This document shows positions 17,645 to 58,651 of a DNA stretch of 64,000 bases, piece by piece (within the stretch, counting starts at the first letter, position 1; each line of letters starts with the position of its first letter). The stretch covers positions 62,001 through 126,000 of the IMG/VR virus record IMGVR_UViG_3300024308_000016. The stretch is one strand, 5' to 3'. Position numbers and translations under genes: made by a program. Below the pieces are notes generated by a model. That model saw nothing but the letters and a program-made list of their open reading frames with translations, did not search any database and had not been told where the DNA came from.

Positions 17645-19639
17645 TTATGCCACGAGTTTTGTCGGATCAAACACCGACAGCTGATTACGAGGACGATTGT
17701 CGTCGTAGGCGCCGGGTCGATTGGGGTTGGTTCCGGGACCCACCCAGATCTTACCGTCATTTTGCAGACCGCACACTCCAAGCGATTGAGGCGGGATGCC
17801 CAACGCTTTGATGCGAACGCTGTTGTCCGACAGATCCAAAATCACCGCATACGCCACCGATGGGGAAACATCGCTGAAGCCGCCGATGGCCACAACTTTG
17901 TTGTTCACCACTGTCGCTTGTCCGATGGCTTTGAAGCCATACGTCGTGGGCATTGGTAAAGTGCTCCAGGTGTTGGATGCGATATCATAGACCCGGATCA
18001 CGGTGTTCCAGGTATTGGTAGAACCTGTGGTGTTGAGGCCACCGATCAAGTACACCTTGGTAGGAGTCGCGGCCAGGGCTGCATAGTACAGTCCCATCCC
18101 AGGAGGAGCGATGACGGACCAGGTGTTGGTCGCCACATCGTACAAACCCGCTTCGTTGTAAGTCGTTCCAGACAAGTTGTAGCCGCCCACCAACATGATC
18201 TTGTTTTGCGTCGGCAAAGAGCAGACATTGGTGACCACTCGAGTGGAACCCGGAGTGGCGGCATGAGCTGTCGGTGACGAGGGGTTCGCAACAGGCCAAC
18301 TGTACATGTTTTTGGTCTGGCTGCCGGCGATGTAGCCATTCATCATGTAAAAGCGGCCGTTGTGCGTGCATCCTGAGTACCAGGTAAAGCCCGAGGGAGT
18401 TCCTGGAGCGATACGGCGCTTGGTCTTGGTGACAAAGTTGAAGACCGACATGTACGCCGGATACTTATCTTCCCCACCGCCTTGCGTTCCACCCATGCCA
18501 AACGGTGTATACATCTCATTGCCGTTGACCCATCCGGAGCAGCACTGAATCGCGGTGCCTTCATAGACAGCTTCCGGACGCACAACGTCTGGAGAAACCG
18601 GGAAAGATCGGGAGATCTGACCTGGTTCATTAAACGATTGCACGCCCGTGATCATCGGTGCCACAAAGCTCATCTGAGCGTATTCTTCGAACTTGATGAC
18701 CGGACCACGCGCAGAGCGCAGAACCGGGGAACGCAGACCTTCTACAGTCATCGTTGGTAGCACGATCGACTGATCCAAAGGAGCTCGGAAGTTGTACGGC
18801 GGAAGCATAGACTCAGCGATTCCCCAGATCACGGGCTGAGAATTCACCGCATCCGACCAACTCTCCAAATTGCTGATCGGCAGTGCGAGCTTCTTCTTGT
18901 CGTCTGTTGTCAGCAGTTGCACCACCGGAAGCCAGACCGTAGTATTGCCCATGGAGGTCTGAGCAACCTTATTCATGTCCGCATTGGTGGTATCGAGTCG
19001 AAGCACTGAACCCACTGTCGAGGAGATGATCTCTACCCCGCTAGTGTTGGCTTGTTGACCGGCAGTGACGCCGTTGATGTAGCTCGCCGGCAGCCGGATC
19101 CCCTGCGGATTAGTCCAATTGGCACCGAACACAGATACGATCAGGTTGTAGGCTTCAGATTCCGTGCTGAGCACTTCATCATAGACCACTGATGTCGCAT
19201 TGGGCTTGAGGTCGATCAGGCGCGGGAACAGCAAGTCCTTATTAGGGGCTGTATACACAGGGTTCATGTCGTACATGGGGCTGCCATCCGGCAGTGTGGC
19301 TGGGGCATCAGCCGTGCCGCGCTTCAGGCCGCTGTACGTCATCTTGGCCGCTTGCAGCTGGTTATACGTCACCAGCGCCGTCTTGAACGTTGGGATGAAA
19401 ACAACCGAGCCTTTGAAGAAGAACTTCATCCACTGATTGTCCGCGCTAGCGGAGTACAGTCGGGAAGCTTCCGGGATCTGGGCGTCATCCAACATCTTGG
19501 TGAAGAAACCCAGCTCCACTTCTGGAACCAGGCCAAAGAAGCCCAGATCCGTGTTCCCCATCCGCAGGTATTTGGTACCTGGTCCGCTGTCGGAGTAGTA
19601 CGGCAGGTGGGAAGACTGCCGCATGAAGATTTCAAACAT
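17645..19639 (-). CDS. virion tail/fibre protein with C-terminal Kelch-like propeller, cassette 2 gene C
   Basis: MFEIFMR...DSGPGTKYLRMGNTDLGFFGLV; Kelch repeats IMLVGG..YDVATNTW and VYLIGG..YDIASNTW. Confidence 0.8.
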   Translation of the reverse strand: MFEIFMRQSSHLPYYSDSGPGTKYLRMGNTDLGFFGLVPEVELGFFTKMLDDAQIPEASRLYSASADNQWMKFFFKGSVVFIPTFKTALVTYNQLQAAKMTYSGLKRGTADAPATLPDGSPMYDMNPVYTAPNKDLLFPRLIDLKPNATSVVYDEVLSTESEAYNLIVSVFGANWTNPQGIRLPASYINGVTAGQQANTSGVEIISSTVGSVLRLDTTNADMNKVAQTSMGNTTVWLPVVQLLTTDDKKKLALPISNLESWSDAVNSQPVIWGIAESMLPPYNFRAPLDQSIVLPTMTVEGLRSPVLRSARGPVIKFEEYAQMSFVAPMITGVQSFNEPGQISRSFPVSPDVVRPEAVYEGTAIQCCSGWVNGNEMYTPFGMGGTQGGGEDKYPAYMSVFNFVTKTKRRIAPGTPSGFTWYSGCTHNGRFYMMNGYIAGSQTKNMYSWPVANPSSPTAHAATPGSTRVVTNVCSLPTQNKIMLVGGYNLSGTTYNEAGLYDVATNTWSVIAPPGMGLYYAALAATPTKVYLIGGLNTTGSTNTWNTVIRVYDIASNTWSTLPMPTTYGFKAIGQATVVNNKVVAIGGFSDVSPSVAYAVILDLSDNSVRIKALGIPPQSLGVCGLQNDGKIWVGPGTNPNRPGAYDDNRPRNQLSVFDPTKLVA

Positions 19640-19654: not shown

Positions 19655-20533
19655 TCAATCCGCCGGAGTCATCACGTACAGCGGGTAGCAGATGGCGTTG
19701 GTTGCGAATGCGTCCGTCAACGTGGCCTCCACCGCCGTCATGATGTACGGGCGTGCTCCGACAGGCGCTCGCAAGCGGTACAGTTTTCCGTCCTTTTGAG
19801 CCAGCACATAGTGGTTGGCATATGCGGGGATGGGCTGCTCCACCGAACGGATCATCCAGCCATTGAGGTTGGTGGGGCCGCCCGAGTTCTTGCTCCAGTA
19901 CTGCATGGCGTGGTCCAGATCCATCAGCTGGATCCGAAGACGAAATCCCTGGTATTCAAAGAAGACGCCGTCATTCAAGATGGATGCGACCGTTGTATCG
20001 AACGTCTGGCGCTGAGCAGCTGATGTGAATGTTCCGTACGTCATGAAGTCCGCTGGCATGAAGTACACCTTGCCACCGATGGTCAGCTTGGAGACCAGCG
20101 ATCCGTACTGACCGGGCACGATGGAGCTGGTGGTGCGGTTGAGTACAGTCAGTTGGGTGGACAGAGCCGAGAACAGCACCGAGTTCGACGCACCGAACAG
20201 ATCGGGCATGTTGGTAGCAGACGTGGCGTCCAGCATCCCTGACTCCATGGAGCCACGGGTGACATTGATGCCACCAGGACCAGCGGAGTTCACGTACTGG
20301 ATGGCGAGGATGGGCTTGGACTGCATGGTCCCCAGTGGAGTCAGGGACTCCACACCGTAGTAGTACACGGTGTCGGGTTGAATAGTCGTATCCTCGTAGT
20401 CCAGCGTCGTAGTGGCGAACTCCTGCAGCAGGTTGGCTGCGTCGAACAAGTTGGCCTTGGTGGCGCTTCGGTAAACCCGAAAGCCGGAGACGTTGCCGTT
20501 GTAGGCGTTCGCCCATTTGAGTTTGATAGACAT
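19655..20533 (-). CDS. virion tail/fibre protein, cassette 2 gene B
   Basis: FN3-like N-terminus (KLKW..FRVYRS..YYYGVE); AGPGG signature. Confidence 0.75.
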   Translation of the reverse strand: MSIKLKWANAYNGNVSGFRVYRSATKANLFDAANLLQEFATTTLDYEDTTIQPDTVYYYGVESLTPLGTMQSKPILAIQYVNSAGPGGINVTRGSMESGMLDATSATNMPDLFGASNSVLFSALSTQLTVLNRTTSSIVPGQYGSLVSKLTIGGKVYFMPADFMTYGTFTSAAQRQTFDTTVASILNDGVFFEYQGFRLRIQLMDLDHAMQYWSKNSGGPTNLNGWMIRSVEQPIPAYANHYVLAQKDGKLYRLRAPVGARPYIMTAVEATLTDAFATNAICYPLYVMTPAD

Positions 20534-20536
20534 TGT

Positions 20537-21535
20537 TTATTCCTCGATGAGTTGCAGCACAGGCCACAGAGCTGGAGCGCCACCATTACGCCACTTTGCT
20601 AGGATTTGGTCAGCGCTGCTCGAATTGTAGGTATTGACGATGTAGTAACCCTTCACCCAGTCGGCGACGATGGCGTAATTATGGTCGTAGACACCATACT
20701 CACACATCAGTGTCTCATTGGACTGAGGAAGGGCCTCAGCAGCAATGTACCTCATGAAGGTTACACCTTGAGCCCAGATCTGAGGAGTGACCGAACCCAC
20801 CTGGTTGCCAATGATGCAGCCTTGCATCATAGACTGGATGAGCTGGTTCATCTCGGTGTCGCGCTGCAGCGTCAGGGCCGCATTGTGTACACCGTTCCAG
20901 TTGTCTGGATATGCTCGGGGAGCACGCAAGTGAAAGCGGTCTATTCCCGCTGTCAAGATCTTGGTCTTGCGATAGGGGTTGTATTTGGCCGCCGAGATGT
21001 CGAAGTTCCAGTCCAGGCCAGAAGCAATACCAGGCACATTGGCCGCCCAGATGCCACCCAACCACGGATCGTAGTCGTTGTACGTGGTGGTCATGGGGAT
21101 AGAAGGCACATACATTATCTTGCCCTTGCGTACAAACTTGTACCACTTGAGCACAGCCATTGCGGCATTAGTCTTTCCACGCTCAAAGCCCAGAGCTGTC
21201 CACACATCAGGCAGCTCATAGCTGGGAACTTGGCCCATATAACCGAACTCGCTGTCGCCGGTGAGAATGTCTACGCCACCGGGACCTACACGGCGCAGGT
21301 TGGCTGTTACCGTTGGTCGCGAGAAGCTCGAGCCCAAAGGAGCGCGGATCTCCACCAAGTAGGCATACGTTTTGCCAGGTTCAGTGGTGTTGTCGACATA
21401 GGCGACGGCGTTAGAGTCCAGAGTAGCGATCGCTGTGCCTTTGCTGGCTTCAGTGATGGTGGTGCCCTCGTTACGGTAGATATACAGGGAGTTGCCAGGA
21501 GTGTTCTGGTTGCTCCATTTCAGATGGATAGCCAT
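20537..21535 (-). CDS. virion tail/fibre protein, cassette 2 gene A
   Basis: MAIHLKW; VGPGGVDILTGDSEFGYMGQV; ends WPVLQLIEE. Confidence 0.75.
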   Translation of the reverse strand: MAIHLKWSNQNTPGNSLYIYRNEGTTITEASKGTAIATLDSNAVAYVDNTTEPGKTYAYLVEIRAPLGSSFSRPTVTANLRRVGPGGVDILTGDSEFGYMGQVPSYELPDVWTALGFERGKTNAAMAVLKWYKFVRKGKIMYVPSIPMTTTYNDYDPWLGGIWAANVPGIASGLDWNFDISAAKYNPYRKTKILTAGIDRFHLRAPRAYPDNWNGVHNAALTLQRDTEMNQLIQSMMQGCIIGNQVGSVTPQIWAQGVTFMRYIAAEALPQSNETLMCEYGVYDHNYAIVADWVKGYYIVNTYNSSSADQILAKWRNGGAPALWPVLQLIEE

Positions 21536-21808
21536 GTCGTACCTCTTTATTCATTGCCGACGAAGATGCCGACCACATGATTCCGACCATAACCCTCTGA
21601 CCGCTCCCCGTAAAAGGAGCAGGCAGAGGTCAGGTATTATGCAGTATCCATGTCCTGATAAATGAAGGGTACAAACACCCCGCTGTCAGATAAATTTGGT
21701 AGCACGCGACTCTTAACTATGTTTCGGACCACAGTTGCAGAAGACAGGCTCAAGTCATCACTCCCGGGAATTTCGATATACAGCACTACTCTAATGAATG
21801 GAGGATTT

Positions 21809-22942
21809 ATGCAACTGTGGAACCGACATACGAGACCCAAGGACATCCAGGCGACCTATATCGGGCGCGGCACTCCTTGGGGCAACCCCTTCAAAGTAAC
21901 AGAGGAGCTCCCCCGAGGAGAGGCCGCCGCCGCTTATAAGAAAATGATCGCTGACAAGCTGGCAGTCGGTGATCGAGTGACTCGTCAGTTGGTCAGCGAT
22001 CTGGCAGGTGTGGACCACATCGAATGCTCGTGCGCACCCAAGCCCTGCCATGGGGATACCTTTGTGGAGATCTGGAACAATATCCGAGATCTGGGAAGTG
22101 ATGTGAAAGCCGGTATCCGTAAGTTCGTCAAAGAAAACGGCTACCCATATGGCCCAGATACCGATGGCTCGGACCATATCAACATCTACTCCAAGGCAGC
22201 CACCAGCCTAGGGAGGGCACTCACCAACATGAGCGCGATCCCTGTGGAGATCCCAGACCACGGCAAGTTCCCCAGTATGGAGAACTACTGGCACTGGCTG
22301 GCCACAGGCTGTCAGCATGAGCAGTTTCGTACGATCGGGCCCTTCGATGCCAAAAAGCTCTCCAAGACGCTCACTCGTGTTCCCCGAGATGACTTCCAAG
22401 AGTTGATCAAACAGGCTCTCATCCAGCGCTTTTACCAGGGCCCTCCGGCCCTTATCCGGGCATTTGTCAGATCTGAAAAGCCCCTGACCCACTACTACCA
22501 CTACGGCTCCGACGCTACTGTGATGTACACCTCCCATAACTGGTTGGTTGACTTCTTGACCGAGTACCGGGAGCAAAGAAAGAAGACCTGGTACAAGGTG
22601 GTCATCGCGGGCACTCGCAGGTTCACGGACTACTCATTGTTGCAGCAAGTGATTCAGGACTCCATGTATCCGATCACAGAAGTGGTCTCTGGTGCTGAGA
22701 AATCAGGAGTGGATGCCTTAGGCGAGCGCTATGCGGCGGACAACAACCTGCCTGTGCAAAGAGCGCCTGCCGACTGGGACACCCATGGGAGGGCAGCCGG
22801 CCATATCCGAAACGCCGAGATGGCCAAGTACGCAGACGCCGCTATTGTGATCTGCGTGAACCAGTCACCTGGATCTATGAACATGATCCAACAAATGAAA
22901 AAGCTCGGCAAACCGGTGCATGAGCATCACATCACGATGTGA
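21809..22942 (+). CDS. DUF4326 + NADAR-like + YspA-like SLOG three-domain protein
   Basis: YIGRGTPWGNPF..CSCAPKPCHGD (DUF4326); DHINIYSK..LGRALTN..GKFPSMENYW (NADAR-like); VVIAGTR..VVSGA..GVD..AAGHIRNAEM (SLOG); GGAGG before ATG 21809. Confidence 0.75.
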   Translation: MQLWNRHTRPKDIQATYIGRGTPWGNPFKVTEELPRGEAAAAYKKMIADKLAVGDRVTRQLVSDLAGVDHIECSCAPKPCHGDTFVEIWNNIRDLGSDVKAGIRKFVKENGYPYGPDTDGSDHINIYSKAATSLGRALTNMSAIPVEIPDHGKFPSMENYWHWLATGCQHEQFRTIGPFDAKKLSKTLTRVPRDDFQELIKQALIQRFYQGPPALIRAFVRSEKPLTHYYHYGSDATVMYTSHNWLVDFLTEYREQRKKTWYKVVIAGTRRFTDYSLLQQVIQDSMYPITEVVSGAEKSGVDALGERYAADNNLPVQRAPADWDTHGRAAGHIRNAEMAKYADAAIVICVNQSPGSMNMIQQMKKLGKPVHEHHITM

Positions 22943-22979
22943 CCACCAGCGACCCTTATGGGTCGCTGGGGTTCATCTG

Positions 22980-23017
22980 TTTGTAAAGATTTTTGGTCAC
23001 ATATACTCTACTTGAAG
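22980..23017 (+). promoter_or_regulatory. phage promoter copy P2
   Basis: TTTGTAA-N8-GGTCACATATACTCTACTTGAAG, preceded by hairpin 22945-22970. Confidence 0.75.
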
Positions 23018-23062
23018 CAAAGCGCTTCAGTTTGTTTGTTTCAAATAGAAAGGTATCCAAAC

Positions 23063-23413
23063 ATGAACCGTATATTCGACTTTCTGGTGCTCCCGCTTTT
23101 GGCCATCGCTGTGCTGGTTGGCATCTTCCTGTTGAGTGTGCAGTCACACGAATCATTCACCATCACTCCGGAGTGCGATGTCTATGCCAGCACGTACTTC
23201 AATGAGTATGCAGTTGACTTCTCGGCTGTTCGCACTGTCACGCGCTGGAACCACACAGCGCCGAACATGACAGGTGCCGATATCACGGCCCGCGTGCTGA
23301 TCGATGGCCGTATCAAGCAGTTCAAGGAAACCTACGCCCGTGAGGAAGCCGATGAACTGATGGCCCACTTTGCTGCTTGTCGTCTGAAGCAACAAGCCAA
23401 ACTTCTGAAGTAA
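23063..23413 (+). CDS. membrane-anchored or secreted two-Cys protein, paralog 1
   Basis: Hydrophobic N-terminus; FTITPEC...HFAAC; AATAGAAAG at 23044. Confidence 0.7.
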   Translation: MNRIFDFLVLPLLAIAVLVGIFLLSVQSHESFTITPECDVYASTYFNEYAVDFSAVRTVTRWNHTAPNMTGADITARVLIDGRIKQFKETYAREEADELMAHFAACRLKQQAKLLK

Positions 23414-24539: not shown

Positions 24540-24782
24540 ATGAACGCTATCTCCTTGCCAGTGAGCGATGATTTCATCCTCCTGATAATCCCTCTGGTGC
24601 TAGTGACTGCACTTATCTATGTCTGGGTCTTCGACAGTGACCAAGAGGCCGAGTACCCGGATGTACCCATCTACGTGCAGATGGTCGATGGCATGCTGCG
24701 CATCTTCACCTCTTTGGCCACAGCCGGCTGGATCGCCATCATGATCGTACTCGCTGGCAAGGTTATCAAGTACGTCCTCTAA
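24540..24782 (+). CDS. small two-TM membrane protein
   Basis: Two hydrophobic stretches. Confidence 0.7.
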   Translation: MNAISLPVSDDFILLIIPLVLVTALIYVWVFDSDQEAEYPDVPIYVQMVDGMLRIFTSLATAGWIAIMIVLAGKVIKYVL

Positions 24783-25380: not shown

Positions 25381-25608
25381 ATGATCACTATTACTATCGT
25401 TACCCTGGTCATCGCGACTGCCCTTGCCTTTACTTATGTCCTCATCACCAACAAGGAACTCATCAACCAAATCTACGATACTACGGACTTCTCTGACTCG
25501 GCATCTCTGGGCAAGTTTGCCTTGGTGTCAGTGGGCGCTGCCTCGTCTATCACTACGTACGCAGTGATCGCGATCATCGCCATCTTCCAAATCTCGCGTT
25601 GGATCTAA
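25381..25608 (+). CDS. small two-TM membrane protein
   Basis: Two hydrophobic stretches; GAGAAA upstream. Confidence 0.65.
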   Translation: MITITIVTLVIATALAFTYVLITNKELINQIYDTTDFSDSASLGKFALVSVGAASSITTYAVIAIIAIFQISRWI

Positions 25609-25609
25609 T

Positions 25610-26011
25610 ATGAAAGTTCAAAAGCTCATGGACGTCTTCTTGTGGACGTTCATAGCCGTTATGATGACGGCTGGCCCATTTTTACCGCTTCTTTTTGTGT
25701 TCTACATCTTCAGCGAAGAGACCGCGATAGTGGGCCCCAGGCTTGCTATCGCGTATCTGGGTCCTTTCTTTTTTATGGTGATGGCAGGGTACTTGTACTT
25801 TGACATCACAAAGAAGTTCGACGAGATAGGTCCATTATTTGCCTACGTGAGATCTTTGCCCTCAGCGTGTGCTGTCGCTGGAATCATCTTCTTGAGCACC
25901 TTCAGCTATAACCTATCTCAATATGTAAGGAGTTCGAATGTCAGCAGCGTTTATCATCCTCCAGATGCAACGCGAACGCCGGCGCCGCCAGCGCGAGGAG
26001 GAAGAGGCTGA
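25610..26011 (+). CDS. three-TM membrane protein
   Basis: Three hydrophobic stretches; starts right after the upstream stop. Confidence 0.6.
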   Translation: MKVQKLMDVFLWTFIAVMMTAGPFLPLLFVFYIFSEETAIVGPRLAIAYLGPFFFMVMAGYLYFDITKKFDEIGPLFAYVRSLPSACAVAGIIFLSTFSYNLSQYVRSSNVSSVYHPPDATRTPAPPARGGRG

Positions 26012-56648: not shown

Positions 56649-57098
56649 ATGAAAGCTGTTATGAACCGCAACAAGATTTCGGAAGTTGAAGTGACTGTTT
56701 TGACCCAGTTGTTGACAACTGCCATGCAAGACGCCATCGATAACACGACGTCCATGGGGTATGCCCATCTTCGCTGTGTGGAGGAAGACATCGAGAAAGC
56801 GTGGGTGCGCCGCCAGGCATTTGCTATCGATGTGTTTCGCAAGATGCGGCAAGCCGAGGGTTTGAGCGCAACCATCGAGATTGCGCAAGACAACATCTCC
56901 GGCGTTCGCATCAACGTCTTGGAGACGGAAAGCGGGGAGTTCTACTATGAGGTCGTCTATCTTCTCGACGGAGCTAAGAACGTCCTCAAGCCTCCTTCGT
57001 ATTGGGAGATGAACGAGACGGTGAATATGGCGGACTTGCTGCATGACGCCCAACTCGACATCCAGCAAAGAGCAAGCAACGAGAAAGGAAAGACATGA
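56649..57098 (+). CDS. hypothetical protein
   Basis: First ORF after P7; ATGA-coupled to the next gene. Confidence 0.7.
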   Translation: MKAVMNRNKISEVEVTVLTQLLTTAMQDAIDNTTSMGYAHLRCVEEDIEKAWVRRQAFAIDVFRKMRQAEGLSATIEIAQDNISGVRINVLETESGEFYYEVVYLLDGAKNVLKPPSYWEMNETVNMADLLHDAQLDIQQRASNEKGKT

Positions 57099-58651
57099 AG
57101 ATTGAGTCGGATTCTGGCACTATCTTGAGCCAGGATAAAAGTGTGCGTATCTCGCACACCGAGGATGGCGTCAAGCGTGGGGTGACTTTTCCGATCACCC
57201 TGTACAAGCAAGACTACTTCAAAAGCGACGAGACGTTCTCCAGCATCAACAGCTATTGGGCCCAGCTGCCCCAGGCTGACCAAGATGAGATCTTCCGGAT
57301 CTACGAGAACATCCGTGAGCTGTTTGACTCGGTCAATGGGATCAAGGAGCTCAATGACGAACTGAAGGTGTATGTGGCCAACCTCATGGCTTTCCACAGC
57401 GCCCCAGATGTCGAGCGATGGATCCGCACTACCTCTGGGCTGGAAGTGCCCAAGAGCGTGCAGCAAGAGTACAGCTTTGACGTGGACAAGAACACGACGC
57501 GGGACCAGACCTACATCTACTCCGACTACCTGGGGTTGATGAGCCTGTCGGTGATCCTGCGTGCGATGATCCCGATCTGGGCCGTCTACAACAAGACCAT
57601 ACGCAGTGACAGCGGCAAGTCCTCCAAGGACACGCACTCGTTCCAATTGCTGGAGAAGTCCAGCATCTACAAGTGCGAGCCTATGGAGCGGCTGCGCCGG
57701 TATATCCAGGCCAACCTCAATAAGAGCTCCCACACCGGCAACCACACGCTGGAGTTGCTGTGCTCGGACGACATGCCCGAGATCAACCTGGCGCTGGTAT
57801 GCGTGAGAAAGCTGTGCCTGGGAGAGCTCAGGGTCGATGATCCCAAGCAAAACCTGGCGGCGCTGGTGTACAACTACATCGTGGACAGACCTCCTCCACA
57901 GGGCCAGGACTTCTCCAAGCGCGTGCTGGAGAAGAAGATCCCCACTGAAGGTGGCGGGGAATCCGGGGAAAACAATGGATCGACCCTGGAACTGTACAAG
58001 GCCCGTTCGACCGTCACCGTCGGTCGGATCGCCGAAATGGAGTACGCGTGGAAGGATCCCCACAACCTGGCCAGGTATCTGTGCCCTGAATACGTACCCA
58101 GTCATCTGGATCGAGCACTGGAGACGACCCAAGAGCTGTACACGCATACCGTGCATCCGTGCATGTTGACGCTGGCTCAGTGGGTACTGGCTCCGGTATT
58201 CCCACCGATGGGTCTGTTCTATATGGACACCAACCTGATCCTGCGGGCATTCGCAGTGACCGAGACCGTGTTGCGCGGACGAGGTTTCAAGTCTTTGGCT
58301 CTGCTGTCGTCGGCGTATTCGCTCGATGACGAGGACGAAGGCATGCGAGTGACACCTGTGGGCTCCAAGAGCCATATCGGAGCAGAGATTCAGGAGCGGA
58401 TGCTGGGACCCTTCCCCTACGCCCGTGAACAAAGAAAGCGCACGGCTACTCCTGTGCGCACCTGCTTTGTCACGGAAGACATCAAGGACTTGTCGTCGAA
58501 GTTCTTGGAGCACACCTGGCGCGCTACTGCAGACATCGAGTTGGTCACTGAGGTGCTGCGCACCTCCAGCGTTCGACGGATCCCCATCCCTCCGAACTTG
58601 AGAAGTGAACTGGCTCTGATGCTGCTGGACGCTGAAGAGCGGTTCGAGTAA
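57095..58651 (+). CDS. non-virion RNA polymerase specificity subunit (phiKZ gp68-like)
   Basis: 518 aa; INSYWAQLP..QDEIF.IY, TY..SDY.GL..LS..LRAMIPIW and QW.L..VFPP patterns; synteny. Confidence 0.7.
   Translation: MKIESDSGTILSQDKSVRISHTEDGVKRGVTFPITLYKQDYFKSDETFSSINSYWAQLPQADQDEIFRIYENIRELFDSVNGIKELNDELKVYVANLMAFHSAPDVERWIRTTSGLEVPKSVQQEYSFDVDKNTTRDQTYIYSDYLGLMSLSVILRAMIPIWAVYNKTIRSDSGKSSKDTHSFQLLEKSSIYKCEPMERLRRYIQANLNKSSHTGNHTLELLCSDDMPEINLALVCVRKLCLGELRVDDPKQNLAALVYNYIVDRPPPQGQDFSKRVLEKKIPTEGGGESGENNGSTLELYKARSTVTVGRIAEMEYAWKDPHNLARYLCPEYVPSHLDRALETTQELYTHTVHPCMLTLAQWVLAPVFPPMGLFYMDTNLILRAFAVTETVLRGRGFKSLALLSSAYSLDDEDEGMRVTPVGSKSHIGAEIQERMLGPFPYAREQRKRTATPVRTCFVTEDIKDLSSKFLEHTWRATADIELVTEVLRTSSVRRIPIPPNLRSELALMLLDAEERFE

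What the first reader, a model, noticed from the sequence alone, without database searches (positions are those of the whole stretch)
21809..22942. DUF4326-NADAR-SLOG triple fusion, a candidate NAD/ADP-ribose counter-defence enzyme
Three recognisable domains in one 377 aa protein. NADAR proteins remove ADP-ribose from guanine (DarT1 antitoxin; T4 gp30.3 family). SLOG domains bind nucleotides, including the Thoeris signal in ThsA. DUF4326 has conserved Cys/His but unknown chemistry. Inference: the fusion reverses DNA ADP-ribosylation or intercepts NAD-derived signals.
Basis: partly seen in the sequence, partly recalled or inferred. Interest (0 to 1): 0.6.

Follow-up and report, generated by a model that had tools for sequence, protein, structure and literature searches.

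The report
Jumbo-phage DUF4326–NADAR–SLOG fusion enzyme
A 272-kb phage encodes one 377-residue protein joining three nucleotide/ADP-ribose-handling domains, the middle one related to the T4 enzyme that strips ADP-ribose off DNA; it is a plausible but untested anti-defence enzyme of a kind already predicted by comparative genomics.

Summary

- **N-terminal domain:** residues 13-86 match Pfam DUF4326 (E 5e-16).
- **C-terminal domain:** residues 263-326 match the YAcAr SLOG family (E 3e-12).
- **Middle domain (about 113-260):** it misses every Pfam NADAR model but is a NADAR.
  - It shares phrog_652 with T4 gp30.3/AdfN.
  - It aligns with AdfN at 82.5% hhalign probability.
- **Active site:** the catalytic Glu (E158) and the phage-type His (H228) are invariant. 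The phosphate-binding Lys is not conserved (Gln in this protein).
- **DUF4326:** it has an invariant C-x-C-x4-C-H motif and no convincing solved-structure match.

The most likely function is an ADP-ribose N-glycohydrolase-centred counter-defence enzyme. It would act either on ADP-ribosylated DNA bases, as AdfN does against DarTG1, or on soluble ADP-ribose-derived immune signals. The sequence cannot decide between these.

Fusions of DUF4326 with SLOG, Macro and NADAR were already described by Iyer, Burroughs and Aravind (2021, 2022). This is therefore a new member of a known, experimentally uncharacterised kind.

The parts
21809..22942 (+). Complete coding sequence, 377 aa plus stop (protein P0001)
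   Evidence: Full-length homologues at 42-99% identity. AlphaFold2 model with mean pLDDT 94.2 and pTM 0.83.
21800..21804 (+). Shine-Dalgarno-like GGAGG, 4 nt upstream of the ATG
   Evidence: Read directly from the sequence.
21536..21808 (.). 273-bp divergent intergenic region between the minus-strand virion-protein gene block and this gene. It presumably carries promoters, but none was identified.
   Evidence: ORF map. The sigma-70 scan found nothing above the shuffled background. The same divergent layout is seen in a 61%-identical homologue on a 322-kb contig (L006).
21809..22144 (+). Domain 1, residues 1-112: DUF4326. Invariant residues are N5, Y17, G19, R20, G25, N26, C73, C75, P77, C80 and H81 (motif C-x-C-x-P-x-x-C-H at a strand-to-helix turn).
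   Evidence: Pfam PF14216, E 4.7e-16. phrog_464, E 5e-22. Alignments A4 and A5. Domain model with pLDDT 97. No convincing solved-structure match.
22145..22588 (+). Domain 2, residues 113-260: divergent NADAR of the T4 gp30.3/AdfN (His) type. Invariant residues are D119, G120, H123, N125, K129, G135, N140, G152, E158, W161, T166, G167, K182, H228, Y229, W245 and R254.
22589..22939 (+). Domain 3, residues 261-377: SLOG domain of the YAcAr family. Invariant residues are A267, G268, R270, G295, G300, D302, G305, W323, A330, G331, R334, N335, M338, S353, G355, M359 and K368.
23012..23040 (+). Terminator-like hairpin followed by a T-run, 70 nt after the stop codon. It may mean the gene is transcribed as a unit of its own.
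   Evidence: This is a consensus match only, and it lies inside the listed ORF 22958-23413.

Best explanation
The gene encodes a three-domain enzyme of the phage NAD+/ADP-ribose (ADPr) counter-defence repertoire.

Shown: the domain identities, DUF4326 then AdfN-type NADAR then YAcAr SLOG. All three are equally conserved and keep their motif residues.

Inferred:
- The NADAR domain is the catalytic core. It would hydrolyse the N-glycosidic bond between the distal ribose of ADP-ribose and a nitrogen acceptor, using invariant E158 (equivalent to AdfN E36, YbiA E48 and DarG1 E88) and invariant H228 (the phage-type substitute for the Glu/Asp of the last strand).
- The most likely acceptor is a DNA base, guanine N2, as written by DarT1-type host toxins. 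This is the activity shown for its closest characterised relative, T4 gp30.3/AdfN, and for every NADAR tested so far.
- The fused SLOG domain would hold the nucleotide/ADPr moiety, or single-stranded DNA as its DprA cousins do.
- DUF4326 would be a Cys-based, phosphatase-like module acting on a ribose-linked phosphate of the released product.
- The gene would be expressed as a unit of its own at the head of a block of small non-structural genes. That placement suggests, but does not show, use early in infection.
For: - Domain identities.
- The middle domain and T4 AdfN fall in the same PHROG over the same profile span (E 3e-32 and 9e-51).
- hhalign to AdfN gives 82.5% probability, E 1e-5, 112 columns. 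It aligns E158 with E36 and H228 with the AdfN His. Both are 23/23 invariant.
- AdfN is a DNA ADP-ribosylglycohydrolase that defeats DarTG1 (PMC11825919). All tested NADARs remove guanine-ADPr (PMC11125620; PMC11543638).
- The three domains have similar mean pairwise identity (0.48-0.53) and 17-18 invariant positions each, so all three are under selection.
- Modular relatives exist: NADAR alone (P0032), NADAR-SLOG (P0024, Ea35-70 Ea357_152) and DUF4326-SLOG (P0025).
- In Erwinia phage Ea35-70 the NADAR-SLOG gene directly follows a Macro (Appr-1-p processing) gene.
- In an N4-like coliphage, stand-alone YAcAr and DUF4326 genes lie 0.8 kb apart in the first 4.4 kb of the record.
Against: - No biochemical or genetic test exists for any member of this fusion.
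- The phosphate-binding Lys (AdfN K43, DarG1 K95, essential in DarG1) is not conserved. The aligned position is Gln in this protein and K/R in only 10 of 23 sequences. The +7 helix position is mostly Ser.
- No Pfam NADAR model reaches threshold.
- The SLOG domain is near neutral (mean pI 7.5) and so is not obviously a DNA binder.
- The extra SLOG and DUF4326 modules are not needed for plain DNA de-ADP-ribosylation. Iyer et al. read them as signs of small-molecule processing.
- Early expression is inferred only from gene position.
Confidence: 0.4

Rival explanations
1. The protein destroys soluble ADPr-derived immune signals or toxic metabolites rather than DNA adducts. The SLOG domain captures the signal, as the host effector ThsA does. 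NADAR cleaves an N-glycosidic ribosyl bond, and DUF4326 removes a ribose-linked phosphate. The result would blunt Thoeris-like or other TIR/NADase-based defences.
For: - DUF4326 is repeatedly fused to SLOG families (mSLOG and YAcAr clusters; P0025), which suggests a coupled multi-step pathway on one small substrate.
- A Macro Appr-1-p-type gene lies next to the NADAR-SLOG gene in Ea35-70.
- A stand-alone phage SLOG protein, ORF83, is an experimentally found anti-Avs factor predicted to bind AMP (bioRxiv 10.1101/2025.06.06.658234).
- The non-conserved Lys suggests a remodelled substrate pocket.
Against: - No NADAR has yet been shown to cleave a cyclic or conjugated soluble ADPr signal.
- The classical Thoeris signals (gcADPR) are O-glycosidic and so are not NADAR chemistry.
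- The closest characterised relative acts on DNA.
Confidence: 0.3
2. The protein is a housekeeping enzyme of phage nucleotide or DNA-modification metabolism. It could be an N-glycosidase/phosphoribohydrolase pair (YbiA-like plus LOG-like) that clears reactive or unwanted nucleotide intermediates, or that serves a base-modification pathway, with no role in immunity.
For: - E. coli YbiA, the top fold match, is an N-glycosidase of riboflavin intermediates.
- DUF4326 is also found fused to replication and restriction-modification components (PMC7824862).
- One homologue sits on a contig that carries QueC, from the 7-deazaguanine pathway (L007).
Against: - The domain is nearer to AdfN than to YbiA. 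Its phrog_652 score is E 3e-32, against 1.4e-7 for YbiA.
- It carries the phage-type His rather than the YbiA Glu.
- The gene context is not a nucleotide-metabolism operon in the window or in L006.
- The QueC link is seen in one contig only.
Confidence: 0.12
3. The NADAR-like domain has lost catalysis and the protein acts as a non-enzymatic binder (sponge) for ADP-ribose-type ligands or for a host ADP-ribosyltransferase.
For: - The phosphate-binding Lys is not conserved.
- Phage sponges against nucleotide signals are a known strategy (review PMC12043709, listed).
Against: - E158 and H228, plus about 15 further middle-domain positions, are invariant across sequences that are only about 49% identical. 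That pattern is typical of a live active site.
- The motifs of the other two domains are equally kept.
Confidence: 0.08
4. The protein is a DprA-like recombination mediator, as some database records name its relatives ('DprA-like protein', 'DNA processing protein A'). It would load RecA-type recombinases on single-stranded DNA.
For: - Annotation of relatives in Erwinia phages AH06 and RAY and in coliphage 24-32N.
- DprA structures are among the best SLOG fold matches.
- Two relatives give weak PF02481 hits.
Against: - The Pfam assignment of the target is YAcAr, and DNA_processg_A gives no hit.
- The domain has only about 117 residues and lacks the extra domains of DprA.
- This reading does not explain the NADAR and DUF4326 domains.
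- The SLOG domain is near neutral in charge.
Confidence: 0.05

Closest known systems
T4 gp30.3 / AdfN (anti-DarT factor NADAR; Pfam PF08010, phrog_652)
   Same: Same PHROG over the same profile span. Same NADAR fold class. hhalign probability 82.5% over 112 columns. The catalytic Glu is conserved (E158 = E36), and so is the phage-specific His that replaces the Glu/Asp of the last strand (H228).
   Different: AdfN is a 152-aa single-domain protein, whereas here the domain lies between DUF4326 and SLOG. AdfN K43 has no conserved counterpart (Gln in the target). The family has its own invariant N-terminal motif D-G-x-x-H-x-N-x-x-x-K (consensus DGxDHINIYSK) and a W-rich helix E-G-Y-W-Y-W. PF08010 does not detect the target.
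NADAR superfamily: E. coli YbiA (2B3W), P. nicotianae NADAR (8BAU), G. lovleyi DarG1 (8BAT)
   Different: Only 13-19% identity. PF08719 and PF22397 are below threshold. It has His instead of the Glu (YbiA family) or Asp (DarT1-linked). It lacks the N-terminal ssDNA-groove extension of DarG1 and is not linked to a DarT gene.
[quoted passage not shown]
   Same: The same domain vocabulary and the same kind of host genome, a large myovirus-type jumbo phage. The same proposed role, processing of ADPr derivatives to counter host immunity.
   Different: The papers describe the class in general. I could not see their figures, so I cannot say whether the exact order DUF4326-NADAR-YAcAr is drawn there. 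No member has been tested. None of 50,697 deposited phage records covers 80% or more of this protein.
NADAR-SLOG two-domain proteins of Erwinia/Salmonella jumbo phages (phrog_11222; e.g. Ea35-70 Ea357_152)
   Same: The same NADAR-like and YAcAr-like domains in the same order, 33-36% identity over residues 116-365.
   Different: They have no DUF4326 domain. They are encoded next to a Macro-domain gene and a phage RNA-polymerase subunit gene. The window's phage has no detectable Macro gene.
SLOG domains: ThsA (Thoeris effector sensor), LOG phosphoribohydrolases, DprA, ShosA; phage anti-Avs ORF83
   Different: The YAcAr family has no characterised ligand or reaction. There is no Sir2, TIR or other effector partner here. 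The relationship to ORF83 rests on the literature only.

Membership tests
NADAR superfamily | YbiA-like alpha+beta fold (helical core flanked by two small sheets) | tested here: met
NADAR superfamily | Match to a curated sequence model (Pfam PF08719 NADAR, PF08010 Phage_30_3, PF22397 NADAR-DarT1) | tested here: not met
   The target has no hit at E<=1. Among 24 family members there are only sub-threshold hits: PF22397 in 2 members (best E 0.007) and PF08010 in 1 member (E 0.15). The genome has no PF08719 match.
NADAR superfamily, gp30.3/AdfN clade | Profile-level sequence relationship to T4 gp30.3 | tested here: met
   phrog_652: target domain E 3.3e-32 (profile 120-275), T4 gp30.3 E 9.2e-51 (profile 126-272), YbiA E 1.4e-7. 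hhalign to gp30.3: 82.5%, E 9.8e-6. hhalign to the YbiA family: 75.9%, E 2.3e-5. Profile search against PDB sequences: YbiA is the best hit, E 0.06.
NADAR superfamily | Catalytic Glu at the start of helix 1 (AdfN E36, YbiA E48, DarG1 E88, PnNADAR E43) | tested here: met
   E158 aligns to it in three independent alignments and is invariant in 23/23 sequences.
NADAR superfamily | [quoted passage not shown] | tested here: met
   H228, in the motif T-H-Y-Y, aligns to the His of AdfN's K-H-S-I. It lies in the strand segment 226-230 of the model and is invariant in 23/23 sequences. The equivalence is by profile alignment; no coordinate superposition was possible.
NADAR superfamily | Phosphate-coordinating Lys seven residues after the Glu (AdfN K43, DarG1 K95, PnNADAR K50) | tested here: not met
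   The +7 position (A165) is Ser in 14, Ala in 3 and Lys in 2 of 23 sequences. The hhalign-equivalent position 169 is Gln in the target, with K in 9 and R in 1 of 23. Invariant K129 or K182 (= YbiA R76) might substitute, but that is inference only.
NADAR superfamily | ADP-ribosyl N-glycohydrolase activity | not testable with these tools
   Needs an enzyme assay.
SLOG superfamily, YAcAr family (PF10686) | Match to the curated model above its gathering score | tested here: met
   46.7 bits against a cut-off of 28.2, E 2.8e-12, residues 263-326. The genome scan gives 50.2 bits.
SLOG superfamily, YAcAr family (PF10686) | Rossmannoid SLOG fold | tested here: met
DUF4326 (PF14216) | Match to the curated model, and the conserved Cys/His motif | tested here: met
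   59.6 bits against a cut-off of 25, E 4.7e-16. C73, C75, P77, C80 and H81, plus G19-R20 and G25-N26, are invariant in 24 sequences.
Rhodanese-phosphatase superfamily (assignment of DUF4326 by Iyer et al. 2022) | Structural similarity to Cys-phosphatase or rhodanese folds, with the nucleophile at a strand-to-helix loop | tested here: inconclusive
Anti-DarTG1 counter-defence (AdfN function) | Rescue of a DarTG1-sensitive phage; removal of ADPr from DarT1-modified DNA | not testable with these tools
   Literature precedent only (PMC11825919).
Anti-Thoeris factors (Tad1/Tad2-type sponges or signal hydrolases) | Homology to known Tad proteins, or binding/cleavage of gcADPR | not tested
   No Tad reference sequences were compared. 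The only link is fold similarity between the SLOG domain and the ThsA sensor domain.

The most novel reading that the evidence does not exclude
The fusion is a capture-and-destroy machine for N-glycosidic ADP-ribose immune signals, such as the histidine-ADPR of type II Thoeris or N7-cyclic ADPR of caspase-linked TIR systems. The SLOG domain would mimic the host receptor and bind the signal. The remodelled, Lys-less NADAR pocket would cut the ribosyl-nitrogen bond. DUF4326 would act as a new Cys-dependent phosphoesterase that makes the product unusable. That would give the first enzymatic activity for DUF4326 and for a YAcAr SLOG domain, and the first NADAR acting on a soluble second messenger.
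Probability: 0.15. Interest if true: 0.8.

Novelty: new member of a known kind. Interest (0 to 1): 0.45.

Why it matters
Phage NADARs have only recently been shown to defeat the DarTG1 defence (T4 AdfN). The partners DUF4326 and YAcAr SLOG are widespread in large phages and giant viruses, yet they have no known reaction.

This protein puts all three in one well-folding 377-residue chain, with clear candidate catalytic residues: E158, H228, the Cys cluster C73/C75/C80 with H81, and R334/N335. It is therefore a convenient single construct for asking what the trio does together, and whether phage NADARs also act on soluble ADP-ribose signals.

It also shows that current Pfam NADAR models miss a whole branch of AdfN-like domains. 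NADAR counts in phage genomes are probably underestimates.

The gain is incremental. The architecture class and its proposed role are already in the literature.

Tried and rejected
- **Pfam and NCBIfam on the whole protein and on the middle domain alone:** no NADAR hit, and no NCBIfam hit at all. This was first read as evidence against NADAR, then overturned by fold and PHROG evidence.
- **phmmer of the protein against PDB sequences:** only a chance-level hit to a c-di-AMP phosphodiesterase (E 0.42), which I rejected.
- **Megablast of the locus against 50,697 phage records:** no match.
- **Word search with the middle domain alone:** one stand-alone relative only (P0032).
- **Other NAD/ADPr genes in the phage genome:** no Macro and no PF08719, and only this one DUF4326 and one YAcAr. 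There is no local NAD/ADPr gene cluster. Neighbouring small ORFs have no family hits.
- **Nucleus-forming phage test:** the phiKZ shell protein gp054 gave no match in the genome. This is inconclusive because shell proteins diverge fast, so I did not use it as an argument.
- **N4-like phage 24-32N Gp13,** annotated 'ADP-ribosylglycohydrolase' near its DUF4326 and SLOG genes: no Pfam hit and no similarity to the NADAR-like domain. I do not count the annotation as evidence.
- **DUF4326 fold:** no significant solved-structure match. The rhodanese-phosphatase assignment could be neither confirmed nor refuted.
- **Domain charge and pI as a test of DNA binding:** not decisive.
- **Sigma-70 promoter scan of the upstream region:** nothing above background.
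  - Read laying, because the holding runs are kept as contigs and cannot show expression.
  - Complex prediction, because the report makes no binding claim.

Full report
**The gene**

The + strand ORF listed by the tool runs 21662-22942. It has GGAGG at 21800-21804, four bases upstream. All homologues begin at the corresponding M-x-L-W-N-R-H. The product (P0001) has 377 residues.

A word-index search of 5.8 billion proteins found about 20 clusters of 373-410 residues (most 373-378) that are collinear over the whole length, at 42-99% identity. All come from metagenomes, some on contigs of 262 and 322 kb. Shorter and longer variants were also found. The gene is therefore real and conserved.

**Genome setting**

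The window is bases 62001-126000 of a 272,393-bp IMG/VR virus record that CheckV rates as complete. A conserved protein of the window (57095-58651) is 26-30% identical to proteins of phiKZ-like jumbo phages of Burkholderia, Ralstonia, Xanthomonas, Erwinia and Serratia. An SbcD-like gene is present, as in phiKZ. The phage is thus a distant, uncultured jumbo phage.

The DNA stretch occurs in a subsurface metagenome, which is probably the source. Partial matches, presumably relatives, occur in animal and invertebrate gut samples and in wastewater.

The gene is transcribed divergently from a minus-strand block of paralogous virion-type proteins (phrog_1062 and phrog_3589; one has Kelch-like repeats). 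It opens a plus-strand run of small ORFs without family matches. The same divergent position next to the Kelch-repeat gene block is kept around a 61%-identical homologue on the 322-kb contig. A 49%-identical homologue on a 76-kb contig sits in a different neighbourhood. A terminator-like hairpin follows the stop codon by 70 nt.

**The two outer domains**

Pfam places DUF4326 at residues 13-86 (E 4.7e-16, 59.6 bits, cut-off 25). It places the YAcAr family of SLOG domains at residues 263-326 (E 2.8e-12, 46.7 bits, cut-off 28.2).

The AlphaFold2 model built on the homologue alignment is very confident (mean pLDDT 94.2, pTM 0.83). Its C-terminal 117 residues align with many SLOG structures:

|---|---|
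| Cyanobacterial Moco-binding protein (6y01) | 12.0 |
| ShosA | 11.7 |
| DprA | 10.1-11.4 |
| ThsA, including gcADPR-bound forms | 9.9-8.1 |
| LOG enzymes | about 9 |

**The middle domain**

Evidence that at first argued against NADAR:
- Pfam finds no NADAR in the protein.
- The isolated domains of 24 family members give only stray sub-threshold hits: PF22397 in two members (best E 0.007) and PF08010 in one (E 0.15).
- The whole phage genome has no PF08719 match.

Three independent lines nevertheless show that it is a NADAR.

2. *PHROGs.* The isolated domain hits phrog_652 at E 3.3e-32 over profile positions 120-275. T4 gp30.3 hits the same family at E 9.2e-51 over positions 126-272, and YbiA at 1.4e-7.
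3. *Profile-profile alignment.* The domain alignment A2 matches T4 gp30.3 with 82.5% probability (E 9.8e-6, 112 columns). It matches a YbiA-family alignment with 75.9% probability (E 2.3e-5). A plain profile search of PDB sequences puts YbiA first (E 0.06).

T4 gp30.3 is AdfN, the NADAR that removes ADP-ribose from DarT1-modified DNA and lets T-even phages grow on DarTG1 hosts (PMC11825919).

**Active-site residues**

The alignments put E158 on the catalytic Glu (AdfN E36, YbiA E48; DarG1 E88 and PnNADAR E43 by the papers' own equivalences). They put H228 (motif T-H-Y-Y) on the His that in gp30.3-type NADARs replaces the Glu (YbiA family) or Asp (DarT1-linked family) of the last strand. Both are invariant in 23 of 23 sequences.

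The third key residue is the phosphate-binding Lys seven residues after the Glu (AdfN K43; DarG1 K95, essential there). It is not conserved. The +7 position is mostly Ser. The position hhalign equates with K43 is Gln in this protein and Lys/Arg in only 10 of 23 sequences.

The family has its own invariant N-terminal motif, D119-G120-x-x-H123-x-N125-x-x-x-K129, and an invariant K182 that aligns with YbiA R76. Either Lys could take over phosphate binding, but that is inference. I could not superpose coordinates with the tools at hand.

The domain is therefore a divergent AdfN-type NADAR with a partly remodelled pocket. That probably explains why the Pfam models miss it.

**DUF4326**

The domain keeps N5, Y17, G19-R20, G25-N26 and C73-x-C75-x-P77-x-x-C80-H81 in all 24 sequences aligned. 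The Cys/His motif lies between strand 70-73 and helix 82-94.

[quoted passage not shown] My result is compatible with that but does not establish it.

**Modularity and context elsewhere**

The three modules occur in other combinations:
- The NADAR-like domain alone (P0032, 144 aa).
- NADAR-SLOG without DUF4326 (P0024). The same arrangement is found in Erwinia and Salmonella jumbo phages such as Ea35-70, RAY and SA002, at 33-36% identity (phrog_11222).
- DUF4326-SLOG without NADAR (P0025). Atlas clusters also fuse DUF4326 to YAcAr, mSLOG or DUF7831.

In Ea35-70 the NADAR-SLOG gene directly follows a Macro (Appr-1-p processing) gene. In an N4-like coliphage, stand-alone YAcAr and DUF4326 genes lie 0.8 kb apart within the first 4.4 kb of the record.

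No deposited phage record covers 80% or more of the triple fusion.

Within the fusion family the three domains evolve at the same rate (mean pairwise identity 0.53, 0.49 and 0.48). Each keeps 17-18 invariant positions. All three are therefore functional parts.

**Function**

Shown: the domain identities, and conservation of two of the three NADAR catalytic positions.

Inferred: the protein is an ADP-ribose-processing counter-defence enzyme. I rank reversal of base ADP-ribosylation on DNA first (confidence 0.4), for three reasons:
- The closest characterised relative, AdfN, does this, and every NADAR tested removes guanine-ADPr.
- The SLOG domain's close structural neighbours include the ssDNA-binding domain of DprA.
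- DUF4326 is also found with replication and restriction-modification proteins.

The main rival (0.3) is degradation or capture of soluble ADPr-derived signals or toxins, for these reasons:
- The SLOG domain resembles the ThsA sensor domain.
- DUF4326-SLOG fusions recur.
- A Macro gene neighbours the NADAR-SLOG gene in Ea35-70.
- The NADAR pocket is remodelled.
- Iyer et al. make the same argument.
- The anti-Avs SLOG protein ORF83 gives a precedent.

Lesser rivals are a housekeeping nucleotide N-glycosidase role (0.12), a non-catalytic sponge (0.08) and a DprA-like recombination mediator (0.05). The sequence alone cannot separate the first two. The assays listed under next steps can.

**Novelty**

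[quoted passage not shown] They proposed a role in processing ADPr derivatives.

What this locus adds:
- A compact, confidently modelled member with all three domains.
- Evidence that its NADAR belongs to the AdfN (His) branch.
- The observation that this branch escapes the Pfam NADAR models and lacks the canonical Lys.

I class it as a new member of a known kind that has no experimental characterisation, of moderate interest.

Noticed in passing
window:5500-7248(-), 17645-19639(-), 19655-20533(-), 20537-21535(-): There is a family of paralogous virion-type proteins (phrog_1062/phrog_3589). Those at 19655-20533 and 20537-21535 share an N-terminal 'M-x-I-x-L-K-W-x-N' module. The 664-aa member has a C-terminal region that matches Kelch/beta-propeller families in its homologue on L006. 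They look like a diversified set of tail-fibre or receptor-binding proteins.
   Followed up: partly
window:24540-26011(+): A run of small ORFs has strongly hydrophobic, membrane-like sequences (24540-24782, 25381-25608, 25610-26011). None has a family match.
   Followed up: no
window:40796-42076(+) and 57095-58651(+): An SbcD-like nuclease subunit (phrog_100) and a phrog_3209 protein link the phage to phiKZ-like jumbo phages at only 26-30% protein identity. The phiKZ nuclear-shell protein gp054 found no counterpart in the 272-kb genome, so it is unresolved whether this phage builds a phage nucleus.
   Followed up: partly
L001 (Erwinia phage Ea35-70) 3495-5523: Three genes are packed head to tail on the same strand: a Macro-domain 'Appr-1-p processing' gene, the NADAR-SLOG gene Ea357_152, and a gene annotated as an RNA polymerase beta subunit. 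The NADAR-like domain of Ea357_152 is unannotated in the record.
   Followed up: partly
L009 (Escherichia phage 24-32N) 2549-4991: The region of this N4-like phage upstream of the RNAP1 subunit gene carries a stand-alone YAcAr SLOG gene (Gp6) and a stand-alone DUF4326 gene (Gp10). It also carries a 116-aa gene annotated 'ADP-ribosylglycohydrolase' (Gp13) that has no Pfam hit and no similarity to the NADAR-like domain. The basis of that annotation is unclear.
   Followed up: partly
L007 1-136 and 8001-9125: A 49%-identical homologue of the fusion lies on a 76-kb contig that also carries QueC (7-deazaguanine synthesis). This hints that some carriers modify guanine in their DNA. Any relevance to guanine ADP-ribosylation is unknown.
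   Followed up: no
proteins P0022 (459 aa) and P0023 (518 aa), alignment A1 columns 122-240: Two distant homologues carry an 80-120-residue insert between DUF4326 and the NADAR domain. The insert resembles a second copy of the helical part of DUF4326 without the Cys motif and appears to be a partial internal duplication.
   Followed up: no
window:22958-23413(+): The ORF directly downstream (151 aa) begins before the terminator-like hairpin at 23012-23030, which therefore lies inside it. An internal ATG at 23063 (encoding M-N-R-I-F-D-F-L..., followed by a hydrophobic stretch) lies just after the hairpin, so the true start may be downstream of it.
   Followed up: no
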